Origin: Octopus sinensis
Taxonomy: Eukaryota
Direction of reading: 5' to 3'
DNA: 64,000 nucleotides
Assembly (NCBI RefSeq): GCF_006345805.1
Contig: NC_043023.1
Location: 6,324,001 to 6,388,000, forward strand
Positions 1 through 45,205 of this stretch are shown here, piece after piece (position 1 is the first letter of the stretch; every line of letters begins with the position of its first letter). Both the position numbers and the translations under genes were made by a program. The notes under the pieces are model-generated. The model worked only from the letters and a program-made list of their open reading frames with translations, was not told the origin of the DNA and did no database searches.

Positions 1-1221
1 CTTTTGCATCTCCTCCTGTCCATAGATCTTTTGTCCCTGTTCGTCAGTTAAAGCTGGCCATAGACACACTTTCTTGTGTCCCTGTTCGTCAGTCAAAGAT
101 TTGATTGAGGCTTTGTTGCCTCTCTGACTCTCCACACGACGGGCCCATCCGGCCACGTTAATACCTTCTCGTTTCCCAGCGCGTAGCTTAGCTCTGACTC
201 TGCAACCTTCGTGTTTGGAGTTAAGGTGACGGTACAATACCGTCCTTGCCGCCAACACTCCGGATGCAGAGCCAGCTTCCATTGCCTCGTCTAGATTCTT
301 AACTAAATCGCCCTCTAGACTAGCCCTATCTATACTTAGCTGATTGCTAAATCTAACGGACTCTGAACGAATGGCTCTTTTGAGGGAGTGCCACCATCTA
401 TTGTTAATGATGGTGCCACACAATGCCCTCTGTACTAATACCTTAATCCGGGTACGGAAGTCTTCACAATTCAAAATAGCCTTGTTCAGCTTCCAGTACC
501 CGGGTCCTTGTCTATGACACTTGTCCAACTGCATCTCACACGTCACAAATTTGTGATCTGAGTAAGGCACAATGTGGAACTGTGGACAACTAAACGTATC
601 CTTATCTCTTTTCTTAATAAATATCCTATCTAGATACGATCTGCGTGAGCCGTCGCTGTTACTCCACGTCCACTGTGGAACGCTCGGCTCATCCAGTCGG
701 TAACGGTCTACTAGATCAAAGCTCTCTAGTAGACCCTTGAGGCTAGGGTTCCCTTTCCTATTGGTTGAGCCAACACTGTCGACCCGCGCTTCAAGGACAG
801 TGTTAAAGTCCCCTACTAGGATTACCGTTTTCGACGTCGCTAAAAAGGGCTCCAGGTTCCGAAAAAAACCCGCCTGTCTACTCTCGTTCGGAGCGTAGAC
901 AGCTACCAACCTGAAGGACTGTTTACTTACGTGTGTCACATCCAGAACAACCAGCCTGCCTTCTGGGTCCAGAAAGACAGTACTTACCTGTAAGTCCAAG
1001 CTCTTCCTGATAAGGACTGCCACGCCTCTGCCTCTTCCTCGGCTAGGAGAAATAAATTTCTCGAAGCCATTTAGAAGAGGCGAGAACGCTTGGGCCCCGT
1101 TCATCTTGGACTCGGTTGCAATAGCTATATCAACACCATGTGTCGTGAGGTCGTGCAGGAAGCAAATTTGCTTCCATTTCAACCCCATTCCACGTACATT
1201 TATACAACCCAACTTAGCCAT
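1..1221 (-). CDS. Tx1/L1-clade LINE ORF2, APE endonuclease and linker (runs off the window edge; absent from the ORF track because it has no stop)
   Basis: Manual translation from ATG at 1221 stays open to base 1 (407 codons): MAKLGCINVRG...IATESK...VYAPN...VGDFN...SYLDRIF...YSDHKFV...GPGYWKLN. These are the canonical APE endonuclease motifs. Confidence 0.92.
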   Translation of the reverse strand, partial: MAKLGCINVRGMGLKWKQICFLHDLTTHGVDIAIATESKMNGAQAFSPLLNGFEKFISPSRGRGRGVAVLIRKSLDLQVSTVFLDPEGRLVVLDVTHVSKQSFRLVAVYAPNESRQAGFFRNLEPFLATSKTVILVGDFNTVLEARVDSVGSTNRKGNPSLKGLLESFDLVDRYRLDEPSVPQWTWSNSDGSRRSYLDRIFIKKRDKDTFSCPQFHIVPYSDHKFVTCEMQLDKCHRQGPGYWKLNKAILNCEDFRTRIKVLVQRALCGTIINNRWWHSLKRAIRSESVRFSNQLSIDRASLEGDLVKNLDEAMEAGSASGVLAARTVLYRHLNSKHEGCRVRAKLRAGKREGINVAGWARRVESQRGNKASIKSLTDEQGHKKVCLWPALTDEQGQKIYGQEEMQK

Positions 1222-1248
1222 TGTAGGTGAGAGAGAAAATAAATGTAC

Positions 1249-2685
1249 TCACGGTTGGGAAAGGGAGCATGACAGTTTAAATCTGCCTGCTTCCCCTTCT
1301 TCCTCCCTTGTAGTCGCTGCTGCAGGGCTCTTGACCGGCGTTGCCACCGGGCTCTGGGTGGGTGTGGTTGCCGGGGTTATTACAAGTTTGCCCTCCATTA
1401 CTTCTTTAGTCACGTCTCTGATCAGTCGGTTCTTTAGATGCTCTCGAAGAACTTCTTCCTTCCACTCGTCTTCCTTTATTTTCGTGAAGCGAGTGGTTGC
1501 TTTTATATCTGTAGCCTTACTATATAACATAAATTTTGAAAATTTATAATATTTATAAACTCTTTCATTTTTCTCATCGAAAGCAATGATCTTCTCATTT
1601 TTTTTTAACGACTTTTTTACGTCTTGTTTTATGGGGAGGGGCTTGGCAAACTGTTTCCCAATGAAAACAGTGCCATGGGGGTAGGGCTGGGGGATTTGCT
1701 TGGTGTGTGTGTCTGCTGTGCTTGCTGTTTTTTTCTTTGTTTGGGGAGGGGAGTCCGGGGTGTTGTCTTTTTTTCTTTTATGTGTGACTTGAGTGTAGTC
1801 CATTTGTTCGGTACAGTCCGTTTTTGTTTCAATACTTGTCTTCGTCTTGTTATTATCCTTTTCTGTCTTCTCCCCTTCAGTGTTGGGAACACTTTGAGGA
1901 GGCGCTTCATCTGTTTTCTTCTTTTTTATGCAGTTCGATCGGACGTGACCCTTCTCTCCACACTTAAAACATCTGGGTCTACGTCCCTCTACTGATACTC
2001 TCATTGATGTTCCGTCTTCATTGAATATCCTATCGGGCAGGTTTTCTAAAATTTTGTTTTCCGCCTGCACGAGGAGTTCCAGGGTCTGTCCCTTCCATCG
2101 TACCACCTCTTTCTTTCTCATCTGCAGTATCGAGATTTCCCGCTCAATATTGTGCAGGACCGCTGCTGCTACCCACATAATGTCGTACCCTCTGGGTATG
2201 TCTTCAACCAGCAGTTTTGCTGTACGTTTTCCCATGTACGAGGGTAGCAGCATGATGTCGTCGTTTTTCAGGGTCAATGACGACACCTCTCTCGCTACCT
2301 CGGCTGTGTCAAAATGTGCCTCAACCGTAGCACTACGCGCACCTCGGACGACATGACGAATTTTGTCCCACACCGGGGACAGGCACTTTTCGACCATTTC
2401 ATTTCTTACGTCCATTATTTTCTTCTCTTTGAAGCTGTATACTTTATATATGACTGTTTTCTCCTTAATCTCTTGTACCTTTGCCTGCGGCGGTACAAGC
2501 CTGATTTCGCCTCCTTCCACCTTCACCAGGTTCCTAAATTCGAACAGTTGTTCGATTTTGAACTCCACATCCATCATGGCACCGCCTACCGCGGCCGAAA
2601 ATGACTGTTTTGGTACTTCTGTTTCCTTTGTTTCACTTTTTCCCATCACGGGAAAATCCTCCTTCGACGTCAAGTCGAAATCCAT
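1249..2685 (-). CDS. Tx1/L1-clade ORF1 (gag-like, CCHC zinc knuckle)
   Basis: Open frame with VEGRRPRCFKCGEKGHVRSNC. The first ATG is at 2685 (the ORF track starts at a non-ATG codon). It stops 27 nt before the ORF2 ATG. Confidence 0.9.
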   Translation of the reverse strand: MDFDLTSKEDFPVMGKSETKETEVPKQSFSAAVGGAMMDVEFKIEQLFEFRNLVKVEGGEIRLVPPQAKVQEIKEKTVIYKVYSFKEKKIMDVRNEMVEKCLSPVWDKIRHVVRGARSATVEAHFDTAEVAREVSSLTLKNDDIMLLPSYMGKRTAKLLVEDIPRGYDIMWVAAAVLHNIEREISILQMRKKEVVRWKGQTLELLVQAENKILENLPDRIFNEDGTSMRVSVEGRRPRCFKCGEKGHVRSNCIKKKKTDEAPPQSVPNTEGEKTEKDNNKTKTSIETKTDCTEQMDYTQVTHKRKKDNTPDSPPQTKKKTASTADTHTKQIPQPYPHGTVFIGKQFAKPLPIKQDVKKSLKKNEKIIAFDEKNERVYKYYKFSKFMLYSKATDIKATTRFTKIKEDEWKEEVLREHLKNRLIRDVTKEVMEGKLVITPATTPTQSPVATPVKSPAAATTREEEGEAGRFKLSCSLSQP

Positions 2686-2880
2686 TACCTCGAAGGTAAT
2701 AACAATACAGGTAATACAATACAAAATTTTCTGCCCCGTAGGGCGAAAATTACCGTTATACAACGGGCACTGTTCAAAACAATCAACACAAACAACAATA
2801 GCACAAATACGAACTCTCTCAAATAAAGGCAGCTAATTCCTCAGAACGCAGATGAAAAGTAACTAGAGAATAGAATCGAG

Positions 2881-4141
2881 GCTTTTCCACAATAGTGACA
2901 GTTAGTGACGTAGTGTTGACTTAGTGCTTGAAACTTCGCGGGCTTTCTATCACTTCCGCCTTGCTCATTTTGATGTCTGGATTGCATATGTCGAGTTATT
3001 TGAGTTTTGGCGCCTTTTCTGTCGTGTTGACTATATACCCTCGAGATTTCGTTATCTCTTGTTTCGGATGTGGCATTCAGCATCCTTGATTGGTGTCGTG
3101 TTTGCTCTGCACTCTGACCTTTCTTGAATTGTTTTTTGTAAGTCTAAATTTGGTTCTCTCAATAATCTTTCTCTTAGTTTCATGTCTCTGATTCCACATA
3201 TCAGAATATCTCTGGTGAGACTGTCTGTGAGGTTGCCGAATTCGCACTGTTGTGCCTTTTGGCGCAACTCTACCCACATACTCATCAAATTTTTGATGTT
3301 CCGCTTGTCCACATGTGAAGAATTTGTGTCTCAGGAAAGTTATGTTTTTCCTGGGTTCACAATATGTATCGAATTTTTCGATTACTGTTTGAAGGTTCAT
3401 TTCTTTGTCAGGTGAATCTGTAACAGGATCTGGAATCGGTATCACTGGAGGGGTTTCCGATCCGATCCCGTCACCTTCAATTTAGTTAAATATAACAGAC
3501 GAAGTCAGGATATCTGGGAAAGACAGCTAATGTTGTTTATTACTCGTGATGATGTAGATCTGGTGTACGTATTTCTGAGGGGAACCGACAGCCGAATCTG
3601 TTGTACTGCTTCTTGTTGGTTGGTCGAAGTGATTCGATGTAGTTCGCTGCTAAGTTGGTGCGTAGTCCTCAGAGACTGCCAATACACGTCCGTTCACGAG
3701 GGCTGCCGAGGCCAGAGAGACTGAGTGAGCGAACCGCGCTTAGGGGTCAGTTTCCCGCACATGCGCAAGGGGAAGACTTCCGGTGGCCAACCGGAAGTAG
3801 TCCCATTCAGCGCATGCGTGCTGAACCTTACACAGCAGCATCACTACAAATCGAAATCCAGAGTGGAATGGATGTCTCGGCCTTTGGAACCGATGCAAGT
3901 TAAAAACATTGAAGTTTTTACTTTGTCTGGCTTTATGTTACTTTCTGTTGCTATCAAAAAGAGATTGAATTCTTTTTTCCACTTTTTCCATGCTGCGGCT
4001 AGATTTTCCTGATTAAAGTTTAGGTCTTTTGGATGCGGTAAATTTTCCATTTCGTCTTTGAAGTATGATTTCAACTTCTTTTTTCTTTTGGTTTCTGTAT
4101 TTTGGGTTCTTTTAGTACTCTGACACCATGTTGTTGTTATA
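2881..4141 (-). mobile_element. Ty3/Gypsy LTR-retrotransposon 5' remnant (PBS plus frameshifted gag)
   Basis: gag motifs LAAAWKKWKKEFNLFL, KFDTYCEPRKNITFLRHKFF, CEFGNLTDSLTRDILICGIRD..LRERLLRE and CHYCG. An LTR-end-like ..AACA is followed by PBS-like TGGTGTCAGAGT at 4117-4128 (minus). Confidence 0.85.
3638..3848. mobile_element. 211-bp insertion with TGTAGT...ACTACA termini (solo-LTR-like) interrupting gag
   Basis: 6-bp inverted termini. Flanks attcga / aatcga look like a 6-bp TSD with one mismatch. The gag frame stops exactly at its edge. Confidence 0.5.
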
Positions 4142-4217
4142 CATATATATATATATATATATATAAGTATAGGAAAGAATGGAGCTGAGCGAATATTTAA
4201 CAAAATTCCTTTATTTT

Positions 4218-4303
4218 ATTTTCGACATATGTTTCGAAGTCTGCAAAGTCTCTAATTCCGAATGAATAAGGAGTCCATTATGCAGCTTTCTCTTCAGGAA
4301 AAT
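4218..4303 (-). ncRNA. Type I hammerhead ribozyme motif (GUC cleavage triplet)
   Basis: Minus strand reads ATTTTC-CTGAAGA-stem II-GAAAC ATAT GTC-GAAAAT. Stem I is 6 bp, the CUGANGA/GAAA core is intact, and stem III is short with a palindromic sequence (ACATATGT). Confidence 0.8.
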
Positions 4304-4892
4304 CCAGGAACTTCTTTCGACAACAAATATAGATAACCCCTGGATTTCCTACAAAATTAATTTGTGATATCTCATCCCTTTCGTTTATAAGATTTTCTCA
4401 TAACTTCTAAGAGCTGCTACCAATTCAAGTAGTCCCCTCGTCTCTTGTCACTACTATTGTGGGCTCTCTCTGCCCACTCCCTCTTAAGTTGACACATTCG
4501 AACACACAGACACAGTCCTTTCACCTCTTGACTATTAATTTTCTGTCAGCCTTCTACACACACAATCACGCATTCACAGACACACACACACACACACACA
4601 CACACATTAAGACAATTATACACACTCACACATACGAGCACTCATTCATAAAACAAATCAAATATAAACACCAGTCAAACGGAATGCATTCCCTCACCTT
4701 AATATTCTTTTACCTTCCTCCTCCAACCTCGATTGAACCCTTGAACTATTTTAACTGCCAGTTTCTCCTACATTCAACCAATCTGACGTCACCCCCTATA
4801 AATAGACACTATTTATCATTATCGCTGTGGGCTCCTCGAGAGCAGTCATCTAAAAACTTGTTGTGCATTTTGTTGTCGAAAGAAGTTCCTGG

Positions 4893-4978
4893 ATTTTCCT
4901 GAAGAGAAAGCTGCATAATGGACTCCTTATTCACTCGGAATTAGGGACTTTGCAGACTTCGAAACATATGTTGAAAAT
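4893..4978 (+). ncRNA. Type I hammerhead ribozyme motif (GUU triplet)
   Basis: ATTTTC-CTGAAGA-GAAAGCTGCA...TGCAGACTTC-GAAAC ATAT GTT-GAAAAT. Confidence 0.75.
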
Positions 4979-5944
4979 AAAATAAAGGAATTTTGTTAAA
5001 TCTTTGCTCAGCTCCATTCTTTCCTATACTTATAATATTAAATTAAACTTCAAATTTCCGCACTAAGGCACGGAGTATATGCCCTATGGTCGTAACTTCA
5101 ACCGTGTTCTTTCTGTTGTGAGTTTGCTACCCAGGTATCGGTTATCTTTCGAATTATCCGTAATAAGATAATTCATTTATCTACTTAAATATATATATAT
5201 ATATATAAAATGTAACATACATAAGGGAAGGTGGTGTACATACGCCGCAATAATATAGGAATAAAATTTATATATAAAGAAACAAGAACGTGAAATACAC
5301 AAAGGGACGAACACAGAAAACAGACGGGTCATTCGAAGCCTTTAATCTTCGGTCAGAAGCCGGATCATCATAGCAAATTTCGGCTGATTAATTCTGATAT
5401 TTGCTCCAACACGGCCGGCCCCAAGGAAAAACTAAGCTGTGAGCATTAGATTTCTTGGTAAAGAGAATGAATGTAAACGCAACAGAGACGAATATAAATA
5501 CAAAAAACGAAAACAAAAATAAAAGCAAGAATGGTTAATAACAGGATAACAGCAGGTGTCTTACGACTTTAGACAAAACGAGACAAATATAACTTATCTA
5601 GCAGGCGTGTTTGGAAACAATTGCCTTTTCGGCAGAGGGGGAACGATGTTGAGCGGGCCGCGGTCACCAACGGAATGGCTGTATGAAAGGAAATAGTGAG
5701 TACTTAGTACGAAAGATTAAGAAAGTGAGAGAGACTGGATAAACGTGTTAACAATACGAGATACTTTATTAGACTGCTGCTTATACAAGGTATCTTCCGG
5801 AGCAGGAGATTTACTGATTGTCTCTGTATCAAGGGAGATAATGGGCGATGTTAATTGTTCATATTTGTTGTGATGATTACATTAACAACTACCACTTTTC
5901 TTGGGTGGCATTTTTTCATAACTTTCAATATGTGCATCTCTGGC

Positions 5945-7195
5945 AGATGGCAATCCCTCAAGGTCGAGGATGATGGTCTTTGCGCAAATTTACTGGTGAG
6001 TCCGTAGGTGACTGATAAGACCAATTCTTGCTTGAAAAGATCGGTCGTAGTGCGGACATCTAGTACCGGAAGGGAGAGTTGCACGTGGTTGTTGTTGGCG
6101 CTCCTTCCGTCGTCGTCTTTTCTCCTCCAGCTCTGCAGACCTTTTCGACTCGAAATTCGCCGTTCCCTCATGGATGGTGGTTTTCCAGAGTGGTCTGTTT
6201 TTTGCCGTTTCCTCCCAGTTAGTGAAGTCGATGTCACACTTTTTGAAGTTCGTTTTCAGGGAGTCCTTGTGGCGTTTCTTCTGGCCTCCTTTTGTACGCT
6301 TGCCGTCTTTGAGTTGGGAGTAGAAGATCTGTTTGGGAAGTCGTTCGTCAATCATTCTAACCATGTGGCCGCTCCATCTTAGTTGGCCTTTGATGACATA
6401 GGCTTCGATGCTGGTCATTTTTACTTCTTGTTGCATGCTGACGTTTGTTCTTCTGTCTTCCCAGCTGATGTTAAGGATCTTCCAAAGACAGCGCTGGTGA
6501 AATTTCTCGAGCGTTTTCAGGTGGTGACTATATGGGGTTCAGGTTTCGGATGCGTAAAGGAGGGTTGGAATAATGACTGCCCTGTGCACCATGAGTTTGG
6601 TTTCGGTTCGGATGTCCCGATCAGCAAAAACTCTTGTTCAGAGCTTGCCGAAAGCTGTTCCTGCACACTTCAGACGGTGTTGGATTTCATCGCTGAGGTC
6701 TACCTTTGCTGACAGATGGCTCCCAAGGTAGCAGAAATGGTTCACATTTTCCAGTGGAATTCCTTCGAGTTGAATCGATGGCGGGTTGTCAACACGGGCA
6801 TTGGGAGGAGGTTGGTAGAGTAAGTGAGTCTTCTTGATGTTGATGCTCAGTCCAAGTTTAGTATATGCATGATGAAAAGCATTTAGGATCTGTTGGAGGT
6901 GATCCTCTCTGTAAGCTGCTACGCTGTCGTCGGCATATTGGAACTCTAGCAAGTTTCACGCCATTGTCTTTGATGTACTTTTGAGGCGAGCGAGGTTGAA
7001 AAGCTTGCCGTCCATTCTGTACGAGATTTCGATGCCAGGTGGAAGGTATCTCGTATGATGTGCAACACTGTCGCGATAAAGATGGTAAAGAGAGTTGGCG
7101 CTATCACACAGCCTTGCTTCATTCCGGAGGTGACTTTAAAGGGCTCAGAACTGCCTCCGTCGGTCTGGACTCTGGCGTGCATATTGTCGTGTATC
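5945..7195 (-). mobile_element. RTE-clade LINE 3' half (RT and C-terminus), frameshifted
   Basis: GMKQGCVIAPTLF, QYADD, LRWSGHMVRM..ERLPKQIFY and RIGLISHLRTH, followed by an RTE-like 3' UTR (accatcatcctcgac..gagggattgcc). Confidence 0.9.
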
Positions 7196-7627
7196 CACGA
7201 CTGAGCAGCCCTGTTTAGGATCCACTCTGCTCAACTTGAATTGGGAAGGGGCTAGAAAAGGTGCCCTAAACATAGTCTGCTTCACCCCAATCCTGTCTGG
7301 AAAACCGCGTCCAGAGGGATCACCATCATGCGGTCGAAAATCAAGATCAAGGTACGCAACGCTGCAATTCGGGACCTGGAATGTCAGGACTCTCATAGAT
7401 AACACCAACTCAGACAGACCTGAAAGGCGAACTGCAATCATCGCCCGGGAACTCCATCGATTCAATTTTGACATCGTAGCTCTCAGTGAAACCCGGAGAG
7501 CCGGAGAAGGCCGGCTGAGAGAAGAAGGCGGTCAATACACCTTTTTCTGGAAAGGTTACGATCCCGACCATCAATGGATCCATGGTGTGGGTTTTGCAAT
7601 ACGAAACACCATCCTATCCAAACTGAT
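7196..7627 (+). mobile_element. RTE-clade LINE 5' UTR and endonuclease start, inverted relative to the adjacent RT half
   Basis: GTWNVRTL...RPERRTAIIAREL...DIVALSETRRAGEG...YTFFWKG...GVGFAI. Confidence 0.88.
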
Positions 7628-10015
7628 TGAAGTGTTGGTCAAGGGCCAACCTCGCCGCTAAGACGTCGGATGTGATGCCGCTTCTTATTGCCTCTTCTAA
7701 CTTCTTAACTAACTAACTCTCTACTCTATTTCTATCTACGGCTAGCGCCTTGCTATATCTAATTGCTTCCACTTTTACTGCTCTCTTGAGGGTGAACCAC
7801 CATTTGTTGTTGACAATGGCTCCCGTTAAAGCCCTTTTTACTAACGTGTTGATTCTGTCTCTGAAAACCTGTCTGGACGGGAAAGATGCGTTCAGTTTCC
7901 AGTAACCAGGACCCTGTCTATGTGCCTTATCTAAGTCTAGCGTACACGTCACGAATTTGTGATCCGTGTAGCAGACTGTGTTGAATTGTGGACATCCTAA
8001 GTTATCCCTGTCTACTGTCCTACACAGTATCCTATCTAGATACGATCTCGACGACCCACTGCGGTTGCTCCATGTCCACGTTGGTGCATTTGGGTGGTCG
8101 AGTTGGTACCTGTCAGACAGTTGGAATCGTCTGAGCAGGTCTCTGAGGCATTTGCATCCCCTTCTGTTTTTGTCTCTCCCCACATAGTCTAGATGCGTGT
8201 CCAAGGTAGCATTCCAATCCCCCACTAAAAGTAAAGGACGAGACGTTACCAGGAATACTTCTAGACGTCGAAAGAAATCCGGCCGACCTGTTAAAGGCGG
8301 TGCGTAGACTGATACAAGTCGAAAAGCGCACCCATTGCTGCCATCGACATCCAGAACGACCAGTCTACCCTCCGGGTCTACGAATATCGTCTTGACTTCG
8401 AGATCCAGGCTATTGTGAAAAAGTACCGCAATGCCACTACCACCCATCCTCGGCAGACAGGGAGCAAAATAAATGTTAAACTGTCCACCAAACATGGACT
8501 TTTGGGCCCGTGGCTCGTGGAGTCTGGTCTCACTTATGGCTATGATTCCCAAATCGTGTGACTTGATGTCATTTAGGAGGTATCCTTGTTTCCAAGGAGA
8601 CCCCAAGCCACGCGCATTCACACAACCAATCTTGACCATGATTCTATTGGGGTGTGTGCTTTAAAACACAAAAAGGAAAGTACAGAGAGTTACTTACTTG
8701 TGTCGAAAGTTTTGGCTTCCTCGTCCTTTGATGTGTCTTCGAGGAGGTTTTTATAAAGTTTTTGGGAGAGATATTTTTGGAAACCCCCTACAGCATTTGG
8801 GAAGAGGGCTTTGAGTTTGTGGTGTTGTTTGTGTGATGTGTAGTATTTTGATGTGTTTGGGTGGTGTAGTGCGTGGATGGTTGTTAGTTCTGAAGTCATC
8901 TTCACAGATGACTGTGATGTACTCCATTAGTTTGGAGTCTTTGGTGTCTATCGCTGATAGCATTGTGTGTGTTTTTGTGGTGTTGGTGCTTGTTTGGTTG
9001 TGTATGGAGCTTTCAGGTTTCAGGTATCTCCCTGCTTTGGTTGCATTTTCTTGTTTGGGTTTTTTTTCATTTTTTTCTTTTACCACCGGTGGCTATTTGC
9101 CATTCTGTCGAACTTTCATCGTCAGATGAAAAGTCTGACGAATCAGCAGGGGGCAAGGGTAAAGCATCTGGGTCCATTTGTGCGGGGTGGTTTGGTGTGG
9201 TGATTGTCTCTCCTACATCCTTGGTGCTTGTCTTCATTGTTGTTCTCGGTGTTGGAATTGGTTTAGTTGCTGGTGATGGTTCTGTTCTTGGTGCAGGTGG
9301 TGGTGGTGTTTGGTTGGGTTGGTCCGTTCTTTGTTGCTTTTCATGCATTTCTGCATATAGCTTCTTGATTAGCCGTCCATACTGTGGTGTGGGCAATAAT
9401 GCTGGCTTTTGTGGTTTTTTCCTGTGGCTGTGGTTGTTGTTGTTTCGCGGCAGATTTGCACTCCTTTTTGAGGTGTGTTTCACTGCCGCATGTATAGCAG
9501 CGTGGCCTTCTGCCCTCGACTACTACATACAACTTGCGGTCATCCGCAAGATGTACGTGGGTGGGTATGTTATTGATGTCGTCTTGACTTATGTGGAAGA
9601 GGAACTCCATTCTCTTTCCCAGCCAGTCCTTGCTTTTCGAAACACCGATATCTAGGATGTTTAAGTCCTCCATTTCGGATGTTAAGGCGGATGTTATCCA
9701 CAGTGTTGTTGTTACTTGGGGGACATTATTGATAATGACCTTTGTCACCTTCTGGCCAAGGTAACTGGGTGTCATTGTTAGTTCATCTGAATGAAGAGTT
9801 AGCGTTGGGAACTGCTTTGCCAACTCTTCATTCTGAAAAACCACCTGTACGTGGGCAAATTTGTTCGACCAAGTCACATACTCCTTGTATCCCCAGATGG
9901 GGCGTAGGCACTTTTCTATTTTGTCTGTGCTTGCCTTTTCTGGACTTTTAGTTGTTTTATTTGTTATTTAATAAACAATGGTTTTCTTTTTTTCCTCATT
10001 CAGTATGTGTTGTGG
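7628..10015 (-). mobile_element. Tx1-clade LINE (family B): ORF1 C-terminal half plus ORF2 endonuclease, 3'-truncated
   Basis: ORF 7713-8639 contains GCVNARG, SETR, VYAP, VGDWN, YLDRI, TDHKFV and GPGYWKLN. Upstream ORF1 pieces contain EGRRPRCYTCGSETHLKKEC. Confidence 0.9.
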
Positions 10016-10134
10016 ACGAGGACATTAATGAAATGAATGATAATGAAAGAAAGATGATGGGGACGGGAGAAGACAAAAAGCGCCCGCCGACTTCTGCCTC
10101 TCTAAAACATTGTTCTTTTAAAAACAAACACAAC

Positions 10135-19012: not shown

Positions 19013-19014
19013 TC

Positions 19015-24769: not shown

Positions 24770-24773
24770 TTAA

Positions 24774-31260: not shown

Positions 31261-31264
31261 TTAA

Positions 31265-31393: not shown

Positions 31394-31394
31394 A

Positions 31395-34159: not shown

Positions 34160-34164
34160 GCATC

Positions 34165-35882: not shown

Positions 35883-36289
35883 CTTGTGTTTTTATGTATG
35901 TGTGTGTGTATCTCTGTCTCCTTGTGTGTGTGTATGTGTGTGTTTTGCAACTATGTACCATGTTTGTATGTATAGATGTGTTATCTCCATATGTGTGGAC
36001 ATGTGTCTCCATATGTGTCCTTGTGTGAAGTAAAGTGTATGTGTATATATGGTCATGTGTTTCAGTCTTCATTTGTGTATGTGTGCTTGTCTGTTCATAT
36101 AACATATATACCTATCCGTCTGTATGTCTATCTGTTTACTTTCGTATCCATATGCTTACATACACATGCATATACATAAACACACACACACATACATCTA
36201 TCTACATAACAGCCCACTAACTATTCTATTCTACCTGTGTAAACTGTAGGTATGGAGGTATGATATCTACTATGTATATTTCCTATTTA

Positions 36290-37975
36290 TTATTGGGAAG
36301 TTTCATTTATGAGGATGTACTCCTGTATTTGTCTGAGTGTTGGATCCTCTGGGTGCTTGGATAAGATGCGGGTGTCAAGTTTACCCAGGTTGCCTCTATG
36401 TTGGTCCTTGGCATGTTGGTAGAGTATGGAGGACTATTTTTTTGTCATCATTTAGTCTTTCTGCAATGCTCCTAGATGTCTCCCCTATGTATATCATGTT
36501 CATGTCTTTACAAGCACCTTCTATGCATCTTATGTTGTGATCTACACTTCTAGTTCTACAGTTAATGCCAGGGCTAATCCTACATACCATGCAGTTATCA
36601 TTGGTGCATATGGTATTCTTAACCCTTTCGTTACTATATTTCTGACCAAATTACACCCCTTATGTGTTTCAATTAATTTCTAACGTAATCATAAATTTAG
36701 TCTGGTTTCATTAAACAACTATAACTTTTTTATTTATCAATATATCAATCTGATTTTTGGAAGATAATTTAATGAAATATTCTCAACCAATTCTATACTA
36801 TAATTTTTGTTACAAAGTGACTCTAATTGCAGGTAGATACAGGTAAATTCCACAAAATATAAAATTATTAAAATTTTGTTCAAACATCGCTATAGAAAAT
36901 GGGTTATTAGCTAATATTCAATTGGGTATATAACAAAATTTTACGATAGAATTTGTTATTCTGGGTAACTTTCTGATACCCATAATAATATTTACGGCAA
37001 AATAGTCTTAATTTCATTTAAGGTTGAGGGAAACCACAAACTATCGTTTCTTTTGCTTTGTTTACGTTTAGCGTAACGGTTCGTCTCCGCTGTAATGATT
37101 TCAAATAGGCTCATTCGAAAAAGTAAAAAGAAATAGTCTAAGGCTTTACTCTTCTGGGAAAGTCTGTGGCTTGGTCCAGTTTCTTCAGAGAAATCACCGA
37201 AAGAAACAGTTTTAAAATTTTCACTCCATTCAGGTGCCAATTTGTTTTCTTTATCGCTGTTGGAGATCTCAGATTCACTGTTTTCACTTTCGGAAAATGA
37301 AACATCAGATTCATTATCAAATACCACATGCTTTTTTTTTTCAGTCATAGAGTTAGATTTATGAAGGTCTTCAGTAGAAAATCCTTCGAATTCTGACTCG
37401 CTGCTTGATATAATGAAATTCGTATCCATTTTTTGTCAGAATTACAAATTTTGAAAACACAATAGGAACAAATTTCGGGAAAAAATCTCCCAAAATTCAC
37501 GGAATTAAAATTACACTTCGATTATTGTACAAAACTGTAGTTGAACTGTTTACGAAGTATAATACGTGTTTTCACGAATGTACTGAAGAGATTTGCTCTG
37601 ATATTCTCATTTAAATATGAATAGGTAAATTCGGGCGGCTTTGGGCGGTTTGGTTTCATAAACCAAAATTTTGTTCGGGCGGCTTTGGGCGGTTTGGTAA
37701 CGAAAGGGTTAAAGGAGTACATCCTACATAGTTGTGATCTGACGGAGTTCCCTGGCTTTTCAACAATCTTAATGTTGAGTTTGGCCTCCTTCAGAGTTTT
37801 TCTAAATCTACAGGCTAGTTCTCCATGGGCTGTGGCCTCTACAAACATCACTTCTTGATATTTTTCAGTTTTATACCACGTGTTCGCCCTGTTTGTTTTG
37901 TCACAAGCTCTTTGTATTCTATTCCATTCTTTGTTTCTATATCTAGAAATGTCTGCAAATGTCTGTGGTTTTGCC
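36290..37975 (-). mobile_element. Penelope-like element fragment split by a piggyBac (36290-36618 plus 37713-37975)
   Basis: VMFVEAT..ELA...LNIKIVEKPG..SQLC continues after the insertion as CMVC...YIGETSRSIAERL. Confidence 0.85.
36623..37708 (-). mobile_element. Internally deleted piggyBac-like element
   Basis: TTAA at 36619-36622 and 37709-37712; TIR CCCTTTCGTTAC. The transposase N-terminus (36992-37429, SSSESEFEGFS..) is homologous to 30385-30990. Confidence 0.92.
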
Positions 37976-38240
37976 ACCTGTATGGCACAATACGTGGTTG
38001 TTCAGCTTTTGGAAATCTAATACTGGCCTGACTTTATGCTTCATTGGCTGCACCACTGCCATCAGGGGTAGTACTCCACTCTCCACTTTTTCCTTCCAAA
38101 GGATCAGAATTCCTTCTTTGATCCACCTCTCCCTTGAACTCGCTTCAGTCATGCCCTTTCAAGGTATGCTGATGCCGCCGTACCATCTAACACGCCTGCT
38201 CTATATGCTGTCCACCGCTAACTGACTGCTTGCACCTTGC
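37975..38240 (-). mobile_element. LTR-retrotransposon RT fragment
   Basis: WIKEGIL...LPLMAVVQP..KVRPVLDFQKLN resembles the RT domain-1/2 region (R..DYR.LN). Confidence 0.55.
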
Positions 38241-38452
38241 CAACCCCACATGCCCACCACGGCCCTTCTGGTGGGACCCGCAGGTCCCATGTCCAACATG
38301 CTTACTCCCTCACTTCCGGTCCTTCCCTTCAACACAGCCTGGCTCATAACACCACAATCATTTAAAACATTTTTTTACAAAAATTATACAAGTATAGGCA
38401 CAGGAATGGTGAGTAGCTTGTCTACCAACCACATGGCTCCGGATTCAGTCCC

Positions 38453-39060
38453 AGGAAGGAGCTGCAGGTCCTCCTGTGTTCCTTGAATTATTACATTAAT
38501 GTCTCGCCCAAGCCAATATTGAGGGGCAGAGCATGTTACTTGTAGTATTTTAATTTTGTCTGTCCTTTTATATAACAGGGCGGCCACTACCTCTACGGGA
38601 TCTACTTCCGGCGGTGCTTCTGCAATCCTGACCCGGGATGTCCTGCATCCCCTATAGGTTGGCAGAAGTACCACCTCCTTGGTTTTTAGGGGATTCACAG
38701 AATGCCCGCGGGCCACCTCTTCCCCCGAGAAGTGGACCTCCACAGTGCCATATGCCCGTCCCCTGGCGACGTACACAATGTCCTTCCAAATCGAGGACAG
38801 GCATTTCTCGATATTATTCTTTTCAAAGTGTTTGAACCTTCTGCTTTGTGGACAGATGGTTTTAAACACTACGGTCCGCTTCTCGGTCTCCACGATACTG
38901 GCAGAGGGTGATATTTTAACATCACCACCCTCCTCTTTCATTCTTTTAAATAGCTCGACGAGCTGATTGACATTGATGTCAATGTTCTCGGTTGCCACTG
39001 TGGCTACCGTCGAAAATTTTTTACTACAGTTATCAACATTGCTCTCCTCTAGAGCACTAT
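38453..39060 (-). mobile_element. Tx1-clade ORF1 N-terminal fragment (family D), next to a plus-strand SINE-A head (~38393-38452)
   Basis: MATENIDI...ETEKRTVVFKT...LLPTYRGCRTSRVRI is homologous to ORF1 at 41161-41935. Confidence 0.8.
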
Positions 39061-39252
39061 TTAGTCCCTGCAGGGTCGACAGTTGGCAGATGACTTCTTC
39101 AGTACCATGTATGCTCCTTATACCTCTTTCACCATTTGTTATCTGTAAGGGCTGTTATGTGTTTTGCACATGCGTCGTGGCTGCCTGCTGTGTTCCTTCC
39201 TGGCTTTTATGTTTAGCCCCGAGTCAATCCAAGCACAGGCATGATGGGTACG

Positions 39253-39470
39253 CTACATACTCCCTTGGGCAGGGTGGATGGGTATTTGGTGATAGGTCTG
39301 GACAAGATCTGGTTTCGAAAATATAGTACTACCATGTAGCAAAGCTGTGAAATCCTGCAAGTTTATAATGGGATAGTGGTCTGGGACCGTGATGGTATTA
39401 AGGCATCTATAGTCCCTGCAGGGTCGACAGTTGGCAGATGACTTCTTCAGTACCATGTGTAATGGAGAAG
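39253..39470 (-). mobile_element. Gypsy RT fragment with a 49-bp duplication (39062-39110 / 39410-39458)
   Basis: RPCRDYRCLNTITVPDHYPI...GSTIFSKPDL..YHQIPIHP. Confidence 0.8.
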
Positions 39471-39864
39471 CTCAGCTCTTGGAAGCAGGATGTACAATTC
39501 TAAGCTGTAACATGTGTTTGAATTCCGCTTTTGTAACCTTAAGTTTTTCTGCTGACAAACGTCACTAGTGAGAAAAGACAGGTGGGCCCATGGTTGAAAT
39601 GTGGTGTTCTACAGTGTGAGAGTTATCTTTTCCATAGGACATGGGTTGCATTAACTCTGGGAATCACCACAACATTGCTTTCTTAAGCTGTTCTCCATCC
39701 TCAACTGTTTCATTTTCCTGTTCCTTGAGCCTTCTTTCCTTTTACTAATTGGGTCCCATATTTTTTCCCTCCAAAGGGTTCAATTCTTGTATCATATTCT
39801 GAGATTGCTAATTTCCCAGTTTCTCCTCTGTGGATCACGTCATTTTATATAGAGATTTGTGAAT

Positions 39865-40028
39865 GCGCATGGCTTAGTGGTTACGGTATTCAGCACATGA
39901 TCATAAAGTCGTGAGTTCAATTCCTGGCAACTCCTTGTGTCCTCGAGCAAGACACTCTATATCATGTTGCTCCAGTCCACTCAACAGACAAAAGTGAGTT
40001 CTACCTGTAATTCAAAAGGGCCAGCCTT
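39865..40028 (+). mobile_element. tRNA-derived SINE (family D)
   Basis: A-box TGGCTTAGTGG, B-box GAGTTCAATTCC, then gtcctcgagcaagacact. Confidence 0.7.
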
Positions 40029-40029
40029 A

Positions 40030-42646
40030 TTTGATGTTCGGATGGTCAAGTCTCTAACGAACCGCCAGCTGAAACCGCTTAAGCAGATCCACGAGATGTG
40101 AGTTCACTTTCCTATGGATCGAGCCAACACTATCGATGTGTACGTCAACGATAGCATTAAAGTCTCTTAATACTACTTAAGTCTTCGACGTCACGAGAAA
40201 GCCCTCTAGGTGCTGATAAAAATCAGTTTGGAAACCTCTAGCACAAGGTGCACAGAGTCCGATCAACCTGAAGGCCTTACTGCTGTATCTCACATCAAGG
40301 ACGACCAGCCCACCTTCAGGGTCCACATAGACTGTACTTGTCTGCATAGCCAAGCCTATACGGATCAGTACCACTACACCCCTCGCCCTCCAGTCTGACC
40401 AGGAGACATGAGTTTCTCGTAGCCATTCAGGAGAGGCGAGAAGGTTTGTAGACTGTCCAGCTTGGTCTCTGTAGCAACCATCACATGCATATCATGTGAT
40501 CTGAGATCGTCGAGGAAACACGCCTGCTTCCACTTCGAACTCAGACTACGCACATTCAAACAACCAAGGTTAAGAGACACCGTTACAATAAGTAAAGGTT
40601 CTACTTACATTTCTTTGGAGATTTGGGGGCTGACCTTACCACATGTGGATCCGTCCCCTTCTCGTCTCTCTTCGCGTAACCCGGTAAATCCACAATCTTC
40701 CATATGGCCATCTGGTTTCTGTCCTTTAGTTCCCGGTATAGGGATTCTTCTACCCTTGCATATCTGTTCTTCAAGTCATGGTGTTGGATGTGCAGCATAG
40801 TCTTTTTGTGTTTTACAATGGCGTCACTTGTATACGTGTCTGTCGTATCGTATTCCACCAACATAACATTTTTGTTTTCTTCCGGGACAGATGGGCAGGG
40901 TTTCTTTTTTGGTGTCTGTGGTGCGTTTTTTCTGTTTTGTGTGGGGGATATGGGTGGTGAAGGTCTACGGGAACGTTTCTTTCCCACTAGTGTGAATCCA
41001 CCCTCTGAAACCTCCATGGTGTTATCTGAGGGGTTGGTGGCAGTTTCTTTCGGCGCAGTGTTTTCCGTTGGTGCCGGGTCTTCCAAGAGGGTTGGGTCAT
41101 TTTGTTTATGTAGGGACTTGTGCGTGCCGGGGCTGGGTTTTTCTGTGCTTTGTTTGGGGACTAGCACCTCAACAATGGGGGTGGGAGTTTTTGTGTTTGT
41201 GGGGGTTGGTGTGTTTGCGGGGGCGGGTTTTTTTTGTTATTTGATGGGCCTGGTGTTTGCAACAACTTTTTTTTTTCTTCACAGTCAGCTCGAATGTGGC
41301 CCTTTTTTCCGCATTGGTAACAGGTGGGCTTACGGCCTTCCACCTGTACCCTAAGGGCCACATTCTCCCCAACGAGTACTCTCTCTGGTAGGGCCTGAAT
41401 GTCCTCCTGTTTGCCTTGTATTAAAACCGTTATGTTCCGCCCTAACCAATTCTGTGGGGCAGAACTTGTGGTCTGTAATATGTTAATCTGGTCCGTCCTG
41501 TTAAACAACAGGCTGGCCACCACTTCTTTCGGGTCTACTGTGGGTGGGATTTCGTTAATCCTTACACGGGATGTTCGTCGCCCCCTGTACGTTGGCAAAA
41601 GTACCACTTCCTTGGTCTTCAGGGATCACACGGCGTGCCCGCGAGCCACCTTTTCCTCTGAGGATTGAACCTCAACGGATCCGTATGCCTGCCCCTCGAG
41701 ATATACACTATATCTCTCCATATCGGGGCCAGGCATTTTTCAATGGTTTCCTTCCCAAAGTGCTTAAACCTTTTGTCTTGTGGGCAGAAGGTTTTAAACA
41801 CCACGGTCCTCTTTTCCGTTTCTAGCACGGTGGAGGAGGGCGATATCACAACATCGCCTCCCTCTTCCGTCATTCTCTTAAAATATCCCTGCAGCATCTG
41901 CAGAGATATCTATGTTTTCAGTTGCTACTTCTGCAACTACTGAAAACTTTCTCAGCGTTGGCGCAATTGCCAACATCAACATTACTCTCTTCAAGAGTAG
42001 ATTTTTCATGTATTATTTCAACCGACATGGTTGAAAAGTAATTGGTTTCCCACAAAACTGTGAGACCTTTCGAAAAAAGAAATTTTCCTCTCACAGAGGA
42101 CAAAAGAAATTAATTTTTTAAATGCTCGCAGTCCTAGGTTCAAATCCCACCCCCGCTGGGGGGGTGGGGGTGAGACGTAGCAACAAAGTCTACGACGATT
42201 TGAAATTAATTTTTCCACCACAATGAAATCCCCAAAAAGGGAAACCTATATTTTTTCCAAAACACGACGACAACAGTTCAAATCTCGCCCGTGTTACGGG
42301 TGGATGTCACAATAGAGCCTACAATGGCTAAAATTTAATTTTTTCACAACAACAATTTGCTATCCCAAAAACGGGAAGCCTATAATATTTTTTTTTCCCT
42401 CTTAATAAGGATAACAGTTCAATTGCAACCGGGGGGGGGGGCACAACAATAAAGCCTACAACGGCTTTAACAAGTTCAACAATATTAATAATTCAATATT
42501 AATTATTTTTTTTCCTTACAACAATTACTTTTCGGGAAGAAAGCACAAAAGTTCACAAAAATATTCAACAATAAACTAAACAGCAGAAAAATTATCTGTG
42601 TGACTCACCGCAAAAAAAACACGTCCGAACACGTCGAAGGTTAGGG
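40030..42646 (-). mobile_element. Tx1-clade LINE (family D): 5' UTR, frameshifted ORF1 and endonuclease start, 3'-truncated
   Basis: VEGRKPTCYQCGKKGHIRADC; LGCLNVRSL..ATETK..DPEGGLVVLDV. The 5' end abuts a SINE-A head (42647-42679). Confidence 0.88.
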
Positions 42647-43440
42647 AGCTACTTACCACGCAGCCACTCCTGCGCCTATATAAAGCTTTACATATTTTTC
42701 ACCAAACTTTTTATATTTTACTTTTTCTCTAGCAGCCAACTCCAGAACCCTCGGTTTCTTGTAAGCACGATCTGATGCATCAGTCTCCTCACCTGTAGTT
42801 TCCTGTTGGGAAGAGGCCTTTGCCGTACTGTTTGTTGGTTTGCTGAGGTTTGCATCTAAGGATCATGTGTTTTATGATCAAATGACCCACTGTTTGATTA
42901 CTGCAGCAATCTTGTTTCTTTGCATTCATTGATTCATTGAAAGGTCTTTTCTTTACTCTTTTATCGTTTACTTGTTTCAGTAATTAGATTGTGGCCATGC
43001 TGGGGCACCGCCTTAAGGAATTTTTTTACTAGAACGAATTGACCCCATCCTCAACTTTCATTCTCCTGTTCCTCCTGCTTGATCCACTCTTTCCTTTTAC
43101 CAATTGGGTCCCATATTTTTACCTTCCAAAGAGTATCTATTTTCTCTATTAAGCTTGGTTCTGATTCTATCAGTCTCTTTCTGCTGAACCACTAAGTTAT
43201 GGGGATGTAAACATACCAATACCAATAGTCAAGCAGTGGTGGGGGACCAAAACAGGCACGAAGACACACATCTATCTATCTGTATGTGTGTGTGTGTGTG
43301 TTTATTTTTTTAAAGTCACTACAAGGATATATAAATCACTTATGGTGGATGGTTTCATCCAAGTTACACTGGTTTCATACATTGTTGAGAAATATCTCTT
43401 CAATATAAAGATAGGTATGTTATAAATCCTCTTTTTTTTT

Positions 43441-43669
43441 TTACTTGTTTCAGTCATTTGACTGTGGCCATGCTGGAGCACCGCCTTCAGTCGAGCAAAT
43501 TAACCCCAGGACTTATTCTTTGTAAGCCTAGTATTTATTCTATCGGTCCCTTTTTGCTGAACCGCTAAGTTACGGCGACGTAAACACACCAGCATCAGTT
43601 GTCAAGCAATGTTGGGGGGACAAACAGACACACAAACATACACACACAAACATACACACGCATACATAT

Positions 43670-43735
<66 letters not shown>

Positions 43736-44118
43736 TTATAAATGAGGGTGAAAAATTGATATTAATTTAATAATACCATTAATTTAACACCGAGTGGCTT
43801 AGCACAAAAAACGAGGGAGAAAATACAAATTTATACATAAATTATTAGAGAGTTACCACTATGTGGATAGCTCTAGTGCTAAAAATAGCTCCGATAGTAT
43901 AGCCACAGAAATTATGTTTCCAACTAGAAATAACATTACATTTAACGGAAGGAAAGTGAACGAATAAATAGATTGACCCTGAACAATTGTTTCATTACTA
44001 ATATAATATGTAATTTTACTTACATAAACATCTATAAATCATCAGCAGAGGTTTGTCTTAAATACAATTTATTAGACCAACACGAACGTCAATTACACGT
44101 GGTAACTCTCTAATAATT

Positions 44119-44159
<41 letters not shown>

Positions 44160-44250
44160 ATATATATGACGGGCTTCTTTCAGTTTCCGTCTACCAAATT
44201 CACTCACAAGGTTTTGGTCAGCCTGAGGCTATAGTAGAAGACACTCGCAT
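43441..44250 (-). mobile_element. SINE family A with an insertion in its microsatellite; a further degenerate copy lies at ~42955-43290
   Basis: Homologous to 23740-24107 on both sides of the 43740-44126 insert. Confidence 0.75.
43832..44126. mobile_element. 295-bp element with 28-bp perfect inverted termini and an internal hammerhead-like motif (43977-44050, minus)
   Basis: TATACATAAATTATTAGAGAGTTACCAC at both ends. Minus strand reads CTCTG-CTGATGA...GAAAC AATT GTT-CAGGG. Confidence 0.75.

Positions 44251-44917: not shown

Positions 44918-44959
<42 letters not shown>

Positions 44960-45166: not shown

Positions 45167-45205
<39 letters not shown>

What the first reader, a model, noticed from the sequence alone, without database searches (positions are those of the whole stretch)
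1..44250. ~44-kb TE nest with extreme strand bias: candidate flamenco-like uni-strand piRNA cluster
Seen: by manual count about 27 of 30 independently orientable fragments in 1-44 kb read on the minus strand. They span Tx1, R2, RTE, RLE-LINE, Penelope, Gypsy, piggyBac, mariner and SINEs. The plus-strand exceptions are the inverted RTE piece, a SINE-A head and SINE-D. Beyond 45.7 kb the split is about 8 plus to 5 minus. Established: DNA transposons such as piggyBac and mariner have no intrinsic orientation preference, and uni-strand piRNA clusters such as Drosophila flamenco accumulate diverse, nested, truncated TEs antisense to one long transcript. Inference: a plus-strand transcript starting left of the window would be antisense to nearly everything, so this may be a cephalopod master piRNA locus.
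Basis: partly seen in the sequence, partly recalled or inferred. Interest (0 to 1): 0.85.

Follow-up and report, generated by a model that had tools for sequence, protein, structure and literature searches.

The report
Co-oriented transposon nest, candidate piRNA cluster
A 44-kb stretch of an octopus-type genome is packed with broken transposons that nearly all point the same way; that is real and unlikely to be chance, and it fits a one-strand piRNA source locus, but part of the bias comes from transposon habits and nothing here shows that small RNAs are made.

Summary
About 38.0 kb of annotated transposon sequence is minus-sense and 0.7 kb is plus-sense.

The fragments are not statistically independent:
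- 7.6-18.75 kb is one Tx1-like LINE 5' part that was multiplied by recent tandem duplication.
- Several Tx1-like LINEs sit inside other transposons, which is a known habit of that clade.
- R2 sits in a remnant of its 28S target.
- piggyBac copies also cluster in one orientation at an Octopus sinensis control locus.

After correction I count 23:2 insertion events (p about 2e-5) and 10:1 transposon families (p about 0.012). The right part of the window, 44-64 kb, is 8 minus to 5 plus.

The piRNA-cluster reading is the best single explanation, at about 0.4. It remains untested: I had no small-RNA data, no transcript, no promoter and no genome-wide background. The rivals are transposon-intrinsic nesting plus chance, and an intron or long RNA of a plus-strand host gene. 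If true, it would be a new member of a known kind.

The parts
1..2860 (-). Tx1-like LINE 'A'. ORF1 with a CCHC knuckle lies at 2832-1252. The ORF2 endonuclease lies at 1248-1 and runs off the left edge. The element is inserted into the zinc knuckle of the gag-like element.
   Evidence: Pfam Exo_endo_phos E 1e-14 and zf-CCHC; tblastn P0002 E 2e-112; junction read.
2861..4156 (-). Gag-like ORFs of an LTR-type retroelement. The CHYCGK knuckle is cut by element A.
   Evidence: ORFs on the minus strand only. There is no Pfam hit. The classification is by motif reading and is weak.
4157..5038 (.). Foldback or MITE-like insert with 171-bp terminal inverted repeats that are 96.5% identical. It cannot be oriented.
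   Evidence: Self-blastn inverted pair 4157-4327 / 5038-4869.
5854..7628 (-). RTE-type LINE. The RT and C-terminus lie at 7230-5854 on the minus strand. Its own 5' end and endonuclease N-terminus are inverted at 7231-7628 on the plus strand. The layout fits twin priming, so this is one event.
   Evidence: Pfam RVT_1; plus-strand Exo_endo_phos E 2e-7; tblastn P0167 E 4e-109.
7629..18750 (-). Tx1-like LINE 'B' complex. It is one 5' part (endonuclease N-terminus plus ORF1) multiplied in tandem, with a 2.4-kb subunit and a 6.09-kb higher-order duplicate (96-99.5% identity). It includes a 'C' ORF1 fragment at 13639-14676, part of which is duplicated at 18436-18750.
   Evidence: Self-blastn; mapping onto B2; Pfam endonuclease and CCHC.
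18751..19000 (-). Probable mariner helix-turn-helix/linker fragment.
   Evidence: Translation read by eye. There is no Pfam or PDB support.
19102..23495 (-). R2 LINE (zinc-finger N-terminus, RT, C-terminal CCHC/restriction-like endonuclease region) inside a remnant of its 28S rDNA target of about 65 nt.
   Evidence: Pfam RVT_1 E 2e-24. An exact 28-nt 28S upstream flank lies at 23478-23451. The downstream flank TAGCCAAATGCCTCATCAT lies at 19121-19102.
23726..24121 (-). Full-length S1 SINE with a tRNA-derived head.
   Evidence: nhmmer E 5e-141; A- and B-box head read.
24216..24775 (-). GIY-YIG-encoding element, copy 1 (Penelope-like?). It flanks the 3' end of piggyBac-1.
   Evidence: Weak Pfam GIY-YIG E 0.047; homologous to copy 2.
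24776..31264 (-). piggyBac-1, with TTAA targets and terminal repeats CCCTTTCGTTAC...GTAACGAAAGGG. The DDE domain lies at 30545-29607 and the zinc finger at 25599-25426. It is interrupted by Tx1-like LINE 'B2' (29462-25606).
   Evidence: Pfam DDE_Tnp_1_7 E 4e-67; termini. P0042 aligns at residues 149-501 and 508-565 on either side of B2.
25606..29462 (-). Tx1-like LINE 'B2'. Its 5' end is complete, and ORF2 is cut at the start of the RT without a 3' tail. It is cleanly nested in piggyBac-1.
   Evidence: Pfam endonuclease and CCHC; tblastn P0001 E 8e-158; junctions.
31310..31394 (-). Second piggyBac 5'-end fragment just outside piggyBac-1.
   Evidence: 67% identical to 37629-37713.
31707..34161 (-). 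S1 SINE split by Tx1-like LINE 'C'. Element C spans 34113-32083, is 2.03 kb long and carries ORF1 only. A target duplication of about 16 nt flanks it. The SINE and the LINE have the same orientation.
   Evidence: nhmmer: S1 model positions 12-60 at 34161-34114 and 39-443 at 32082-31707; junction sequences.
34167..34807 (-). C-terminal fragment of an RTE-type LINE ORF2.
   Evidence: tblastn P0182 E 7e-15.
35640..35890 (+). S3 SINE, a plus-strand exception. The two copies in the right part of the window are minus.
   Evidence: Alignment A1. Its orientation is inferred from box-like motifs and tail repeats.
36399..38158 (-). GIY-YIG element copy 2, interrupted by piggyBac-2. piggyBac-2 spans 36626-37712, is 1087 bp long, non-autonomous and has intact ends. 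Its TTAA site lies 63 nt from the site used by piggyBac-1.
   Evidence: It is 95% identical to O. sinensis L003 5597-6679.
38391..38475 (+). S1 head fragment, a plus-strand exception.
   Evidence: nhmmer E 2e-12.
38476..39154 (-). Tx1-like 'D-prime' ORF1 fragment.
   Evidence: 73% identical to 41387-41882; 256-aa stop-to-stop reading frame on minus (204 aa from its first start codon).
39256..39471 (-). Short reverse-transcriptase fragment, possibly LTR-type.
   Evidence: Pfam RVT_1 E 1e-4, below the gathering score.
40000..42684 (-). Tx1-like LINE 'D' (ORF1 with CCHC, endonuclease to about residue 184). It joins an S1 head at the same S1 position as element C (42684-42630).
   Evidence: Pfam zf-CCHC; tblastn P0005 E 5e-20; junction.
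42951..44249 (-). Two further S1 SINE copies. One lies at 43283-42951. The other lies at 43683-43422 plus 44249-44139 and is split by an insert of about 450 bp.
   Evidence: nhmmer; blastn.

Best explanation
The region from the left edge of the window to about 44-46 kb is a transposon nest lying in a long plus-strand transcription unit. Most likely it is a uni-strand piRNA precursor locus whose start lies left of the window.

Insertions antisense to that transcript would be kept, because they yield transposon-complementary small RNAs. Sense insertions would be lost, because they add nothing or terminate the transcript.

On top of this base layer, transposon-intrinsic processes multiplied the co-oriented pieces:
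- Tx1-like LINEs homed into resident transposons in a fixed relative orientation.
- R2 entered a 28S fragment.
- One LINE 5' part was tandemly duplicated.

Shown: the transposon content, the orientations, the nesting and the duplications. Inferred: the transcript, its strand, piRNA production and the selection.
For: - The bias survives every correction I could make: events 23:2 (p 1.9e-5), families 10:1 (p 0.012).
- Removing four Tx1-like elements (A, B2, C, D) that sit inside another transposon and may take their orientation from it leaves 19:2 (my calculation, p about 2e-4).
- The bias spans unrelated classes: APE-type LINEs, RTE, R2, piggyBac, a GIY-YIG element and five separate S1 SINE insertions.
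- About 87% of the 44 kb is annotated transposon sequence, 38.0 kb minus-sense and 0.7 kb plus-sense.
- Internal control: the adjacent 20 kb is 8:5, and direct and inverted repeats there are balanced.
- External control: at an O. sinensis locus, piggyBac pieces are co-oriented but other families are mixed.
- The bias decays to the right while S1 remains mostly minus to 57 kb. [quoted passage not shown]
- In Drosophila, strand-biased transposon content alone predicted clusters that small-RNA sequencing later confirmed (PMC10643416).
- PIWI genes and transposon-antisense piRNAs are ubiquitous in molluscs (PMC6128900).
Against: - I have no small-RNA data, no transcript and no promoter, and the window's protein sequences are not in the searchable collections.
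- At family level, significance is only about 0.01, and stage-1 scanning selects for extremes.
- Same-family co-oriented clusters occur elsewhere without any need for selection: Argonauta L001, the tandem LINE array L002 and the O. sinensis piggyBac cluster L003.
- AATAAA is not depleted on the plus strand: 28 observed against 13.3 +/- 3.9 expected.
- Gypsy-type endogenous retroviruses, the hallmark cargo of flamenco, are nearly absent.
- It is not known whether cephalopod piRNA clusters show antisense transposon bias.
Confidence: 0.4

Rival explanations
1. No transcription-linked selection is involved. The co-orientation comes from transposon-intrinsic mechanisms plus chance. These mechanisms are target-specific LINEs (Tx1-like, R2) that copy the orientation of their targets, local clustered piggyBac insertion, tandem duplication and deletions. 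The few truly independent base-layer elements happen to agree.
For: - 7.6-18.75 kb is one element multiplied at 96-99.5% identity.
- Elements C and D join S1 at the identical position, and C has a target duplication.
- B2 sits inside piggyBac and A inside the gag-like element.
- Tx1 families are known to prefer mariner or LTR elements as targets (PMC4494074).
- R2 lies in a 28S remnant.
- Co-oriented same-family clusters occur at all three control loci.
- The family-level p is only 0.012, and the finding was selected by scanning.
Against: - Five separate S1 SINE insertions, two GIY-YIG copies, RTE, the R2 target, the LINE C-terminal fragment and the RT fragment have no known reason to share orientation.
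- After dropping the four Tx1-like elements nested in another transposon, the count is still 19:2.
- The O. sinensis control shows mixed orientation across families, and the window's own right part is balanced.
Confidence: 0.3
2. The region is a large intron, or part of a long non-coding RNA, of a plus-strand host gene. Ordinary purifying selection against sense-oriented transposons (splice and poly(A) signals) leaves mostly antisense copies. No piRNA role is needed.
For: - Antisense enrichment of LINEs and LTR elements in introns is well established in animals (general knowledge).
- The S1 minus bias continues through 45-57 kb. That fits a transcription unit longer than the nest.
- Octopus genes have long, repeat-rich introns (general knowledge).
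Against: - The intronic biases known from other animals are moderate, and weak for SINEs and DNA transposons. Here these classes are 5:1 and 4:0.
- No exon-like or host-domain ORF was found on either strand.
- Several plus-sense LINE and mariner pieces sit in 45-59 kb.
- Plus-strand AATAAA is not depleted.
Confidence: 0.22
3. The locus is transcribed from the minus strand, from a promoter near 44-46 kb. The transposons would then be sense to the transcript, as in a read-through or transposon-driven long RNA or a sense-piRNA source.
For: The change in composition and orientation at 44-46 kb could mark a promoter as easily as a terminator.
Against: - No selective reason is known that would enrich sense insertions of many families.
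- Sense transposons carry their own termination signals.
Confidence: 0.03

Closest known systems
Drosophila flamenco and flam-like uni-strand piRNA clusters (PMC10643416)
   Same: - Tens of kilobases of dense, nested, truncated transposons, nearly all in one orientation.
- The bias is strongest on one side and relaxed towards the other.
- The locus is open-ended and may be much larger than the window.
   Different: - The cargo here is APE-type LINEs, RTE, R2, piggyBac, a GIY-YIG element and SINEs. It is not env-bearing Gypsy elements.
- No promoter, transcript or piRNA evidence exists.
- The host is a mollusc, where cluster architecture is not characterised for cephalopods.
proTRAC-type piRNA clusters of gastropods and bivalves (PMC6128900)
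   Same: The phylum is the same, PIWI/piRNA expression is ubiquitous there, and transposon-matching piRNAs are enriched for antisense.
   Different: Those clusters were defined from small-RNA mapping. This one is defined only from transposon orientation.
Composite nests built by target-specific Tx1-clade LINEs (Xenopus Tx1L in Tx1D; crocodilian Tx1-Mar, PMC4494074)
   Same: Tx1-like LINEs are inserted at defined sites inside other transposons (S1 SINE head, piggyBac, gag-like element) in a fixed relative orientation.
   Different: - The targets here include a tRNA-derived SINE head.
- Several copies are complete at the 5' end but lack the RT and 3' end.
- Clade membership was not tested by phylogeny.
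Antisense-biased transposon content of long introns
   Same: One-strand excess of LINE and LTR fragments along a transcription unit.
   Different: - The bias here is far stronger.
- It includes SINEs and DNA transposons.
- No exons were seen.

Membership tests
Uni-strand (flamenco-type) piRNA cluster | Dense, diverse, fragmented transposon content over tens of kilobases. | tested here: met
   About 87% of 1-44250 is annotated as transposon pieces from at least 11 families.
Uni-strand (flamenco-type) piRNA cluster | Strong excess of transposons in one orientation. | tested here: met
   Fragments 29:3, events 23:2, families 10:1. Direct against inverted self-matches: 76:3.
Uni-strand (flamenco-type) piRNA cluster | Abundant 24-32-nt, 1U-biased, phased small RNAs from one genomic strand. 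| not testable with these tools
   No small-RNA data are reachable. O. bimaculoides libraries exist (PMC12479628).
Uni-strand (flamenco-type) piRNA cluster | Discrete promoter and a long precursor transcript antisense to the transposons. | not testable with these tools
   The proposed start lies left of the window and no expression data are available. Plus-strand AATAAA is not depleted.
Uni-strand (flamenco-type) piRNA cluster | Enrichment of env-bearing Gypsy endogenous retroviruses (specific to flamenco itself). | tested here: not met
   Only a gag-like ORF set and one weak RT fragment were found. LINEs, DNA transposons and SINEs dominate.
Tx1-clade target-specific LINE | ORF1 with a CCHC knuckle and ORF2 with an APE-type endonuclease followed by RT. 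| tested here: inconclusive
   CCHC and Exo_endo_phos are found in A, B, B2 and D. No copy in the window keeps its RT. Homologues carry PF03372 plus PF00078.
Tx1-clade target-specific LINE | Insertion at one defined site of a repeated target. | tested here: met
   C and D join the S1 head after the same ...TAACC position. C has a target duplication of about 16 nt.
Tx1-clade target-specific LINE | Phylogenetic placement of the RT within the Tx1 clade. | not tested
   There is no RT in the window copies and no reference set was available.
R2 LINE | Insertion at the canonical 28S rDNA site, with an RT and a C-terminal endonuclease region. | tested here: met
   28S flanks lie on both sides. RVT_1 E 2e-24. 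zf-RVT is weak.
piggyBac | DDE_Tnp_1_7 transposase, C-terminal zinc finger, TTAA target and CCC...GGG terminal repeats. | tested here: met
Intron of a plus-strand host gene | Flanking exons or an annotated gene spanning the locus. | not testable with these tools
No host-domain ORF is present in the window.

The most novel reading that the evidence does not exclude
A cephalopod has a flamenco-like 'master' locus: a long one-strand piRNA precursor that traps LINEs, DNA transposons and SINEs in antisense orientation. It would have evolved independently of the Drosophila Gypsy trap and might act in soma or brain, where octopus LINEs are reported to be expressed.
Probability: 0.35. Interest if true: 0.65.

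Novelty: new member of a known kind. Interest (0 to 1): 0.45.

Why it matters
No piRNA cluster map for a cephalopod turned up in the searchable literature. Octopus genomes are transposon-rich, and LINE expression in the octopus brain has been reported (PMC9115989). A locus that can be predicted from sequence alone gives a concrete, cheap test with existing small-RNA libraries. If confirmed, it would show that antisense 'trap' architecture extends beyond arthropods and beyond retroviral cargo. If refuted, it shows how far target-specific LINEs and local duplication can mimic that signature. That matters for anyone who predicts clusters from transposon orientation.

Tried and rejected
I replaced it with pasted ORF concatenates.
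- Rfam and tRNA scans gave only microsatellite pseudo-miRNA hits below the gathering score, and no tRNA or rRNA call. The 28S remnants are too short for the models.
- I could not locate the window in a public assembly. Exact look-ups of 11 ORFs failed. The best protein relatives are only 62-69% identical.
- A genome background was therefore not obtainable. Only three control loci could be fetched (L001 Argonauta, L002 unknown organism, L003 O. sinensis).
- The RTE bait returned no Octopus proteins.
- Pfam and PDB gave no support for the mariner fragment at 18.75-19.0 kb or for the gag-like ORFs.
- I rejected a telomere-type head-to-tail LINE array, because the copies are truncated at the 3' end, not the 5' end.
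- I rejected a degenerate array of one repeated target, because no shared target remnant lies between the elements.
- I rejected a single giant composite element, because the nested junctions and target duplications differ from one element to the next.
- I tested for poly(A)-hexamer depletion on the plus strand and found none.
Full report
**What is there**

The window has no Ns. Over 1-42 kb the plus strand is markedly T-rich, with AT skew from -0.12 to -0.33 in most 2-kb bins. Beyond about 44 kb it is not.

I scanned stop-to-stop ORFs of at least 60 aa from both strands against Pfam, treating the strands alike.

Minus strand, below 44 kb (coordinates):
- APE-type endonuclease at 553-1149, 8016-8582 and 26406-26903.
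- CCHC ORF1s at about 1.95, 9.5, 28.0 and 41.3 kb.
- RVT_1 at 7042-7200 and 21021-21560, plus a weak hit at 39271-39447.
- piggyBac DDE at 29637-30545 (E 4e-67), and its zinc finger at 25438-25599.

Plus strand:
- A single hit, an endonuclease N-terminus at 7371-7628.

No Pfam hit on either strand lies beyond 42 kb.

tblastn with homologues from the large protein collection confirmed this. All six LINE ORF2 intervals, all three RTE-type intervals and all four piggyBac intervals are on the minus strand.

Self-comparison is equally lopsided. Within 1-44250 there are 76 direct pairs (27.6 kb) and 3 inverted pairs (273 bp). Within 44251-64000 there are 25 direct and 22 inverted pairs.

**SINEs**

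- S1 is about 400 bp long. Its tRNA-like head, with A and B boxes, lies at the right-hand end on the plus strand.
  - Minus copies: 24121-23726, 32082-31707 with 34161-34114, 42684-42630, 43283-42951, and 43683-43422 with 44249-44139.
  - Minus copies further right: 45794, 47141, 48339, 52944 and 57428.
  - Plus copies: only 38391-38475 and 60966-61403.
- S3 is plus at 35640-35890 and minus at 46.7 and 59.5 kb.
- S2 is minus at 51.8-52.4 kb and plus at 55.7-56.2 kb.

**Counts**

My table for 1-44250 gives:
- 29 minus and 3 plus fragments.
- 23:2 after merging duplicates and split elements into events (p 1.9e-5).
- 10:1 when each family counts once (p 0.012).
- 37,971 bp of annotated minus-sense sequence and 734 bp of plus-sense sequence.

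The right part of the window is 8 minus to 5 plus (p 0.58). Either way it is unbiased.

**Why the fragments are not independent**

1. 7629-18750 is one Tx1-like 5' part (endonuclease N-terminus plus ORF1) multiplied in tandem.
   - 8435-10137, 10828-12529 and 14677-16226 match at 96-97% identity.
   - 8591-11215 matches 14677-17303 at 98.7%.
   - 12503-13956 matches 17300-18750 at 99.5%.
2. Tx1-like LINE C (34113-32083) lies inside an S1 SINE with a target duplication of about 16 nt. LINE D joins an S1 head after exactly the same position.
3. B2 lies cleanly inside the piggyBac-1 reading frame. Homologue P0042 aligns at residues 149-501 on one side and 508-565 on the other.
4. Element A cuts the zinc knuckle of a gag-like ORF.
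5. Tx1-clade families are known to prefer other transposons as targets (PMC4494074). The orientation of these LINEs therefore copies that of their targets.
6. R2 (19122-23450) is flanked by remnants of its 28S target. An exact 28-mer lies at 23478-23451, and TAGCCAAATGCCTCATCAT lies at 19121-19102.
7. The plus-strand RTE piece is the element's own 5' end, inverted next to its RT. That is the layout twin priming gives, so it counts as one event.
8. piggyBac-1, a neighbouring 5'-end fragment and the 1087-bp non-autonomous piggyBac-2 all point the same way.
   - piggyBac-1 and piggyBac-2 sit in two copies of a GIY-YIG-encoding element, at TTAA sites 63 nt apart.

**Controls I could reach**

The window's proteins are not in the collections. 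Its transposon copies are 90-95% identical to copies in Octopus sinensis. The source is therefore Octopus or a close relative.

- O. sinensis locus L003: eight piggyBac pieces are co-oriented within 8 kb, and one junction is head-to-tail. S3 is found in both orientations and S2 is opposite to the piggyBac pieces.
- Argonauta locus L001: two Tx1-like copies and two to three fragments are co-oriented. A Penelope-like RT ORF, read by eye, lies on the other strand.
- L002, from an unknown organism: a head-to-tail array of a 6.43-kb LINE at 99-100% identity.

Same-family co-orientation is therefore ordinary in these genomes. Cross-family co-orientation like that in 1-44 kb was not seen in these few controls.

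**Interpretation**

Four Tx1-like elements (A, B2, C, D) sit inside another transposon and may take their orientation from it; only C and D show a defined target site. Dropping them leaves 19:2 (my calculation, p about 2e-4). The remaining base layer has no known mechanistic reason to agree. It consists of:
- five S1 insertions;
- two GIY-YIG copies;
- piggyBac;
- RTE;
- the R2 target;
- a LINE C-terminal fragment;
- an RT fragment;
- the gag-like and mariner-like pieces.

A long plus-strand transcription unit that retains antisense insertions explains this layer. It also explains the relaxation to the right. In Drosophila flam-like clusters, sense insertions are likewise tolerated towards the 3' end. 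There, strand-biased transposon content alone predicted clusters that small-RNA sequencing later confirmed (PMC10643416).

Molluscs express PIWI genes and transposon-antisense piRNAs broadly (PMC6128900). I found no published cluster map for a cephalopod.

Several points weigh against a confident call:
- I have no expression data of any kind.
- Significance at family level is about 0.01, and the finding was selected by scanning.
- There is no depletion of AATAAA on the plus strand (28 observed, 13.3 +/- 3.9 expected).
- The cargo is unlike flamenco's.

I put the piRNA-cluster reading at about 0.40, transposon-intrinsic nesting plus chance at 0.30, and an intron or long RNA of a plus-strand host gene at 0.22.

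**Verdict**

If true, this is a new member of a known kind. Interest 0.45.

Noticed in passing
window 31707-34161 and 42630-42684: Two Tx1-like LINEs (C and D) are inserted after the same position of the tRNA-like head of the S1 SINE, in the SINE's orientation. C is a 2.03-kb, ORF1-only element with a target duplication of about 16 nt. This looks like a SINE-head-specific LINE lineage with a 'half-LINE' derivative.
   Followed up: partly
window 19102-23495: An R2 element lies outside any rDNA array. It is flanked by only about 45 nt (upstream) and about 19 nt (downstream) of its 28S target. Eight nucleotides of the target are missing at the 5' junction.
   Followed up: partly
window 25606-29462; also 7629 and about 40000: Tx1-like copies are complete at the 5' end but truncated at the 3' end. 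Target-primed reverse transcription from the 3' end does not produce this. B2 ends at the start of its RT, yet it interrupts the piggyBac ORF with at most about 6 residues unaccounted for. Internal priming or capture during break repair is possible. This is unresolved.
   Followed up: partly
window 4157-5038: An AT-rich 0.88-kb insert with 171-bp terminal inverted repeats (96.5% identical). It looks like a foldback or MITE-type element.
   Followed up: no
L003 3888-11970 (O. sinensis CM016867.1:91463463-91485132): Four to six piggyBac copies or fragments of the same family lie in one orientation within 8 kb. One 3' end abuts the next 5' end. The cluster lies next to a gene whose product carries ATP synthase alpha/beta-family Pfam domains.
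   Followed up: partly
L002 1-22307 (ENA ERZ21867824 ctg108305l): A head-to-tail tandem array of a full-length 6.43-kb APE-type LINE (ORF1 643 aa, ORF2 1158 aa). The copies are 99-100% identical.
   Followed up: partly
window 5854-7230: The closest proteins to this RTE-type C-terminus come from Anolis carolinensis and the mantis shrimp Oratosquilla (52-73% identity), not from Octopus. That patchy distribution is what is usually seen with horizontally spreading RTE elements.
   Followed up: no
window 48988-51266 and 60461-62730: Long simple-sequence or satellite arrays. One is an ACC-rich 120-bp repeat, one is a GT/GAGAAAGTAT 22-24-bp repeat, and two are ATC/GAT triplet arrays in opposite orientation.
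   Followed up: no
window 51820-52358: The S2 SINE is present as 2.7 tandem units of 184 bp rather than as a single copy.
   Followed up: no
window 45549-57428: S1 SINE copies remain mostly minus (5 to 1) well beyond the 44-kb boundary of the nest.
   Followed up: partly
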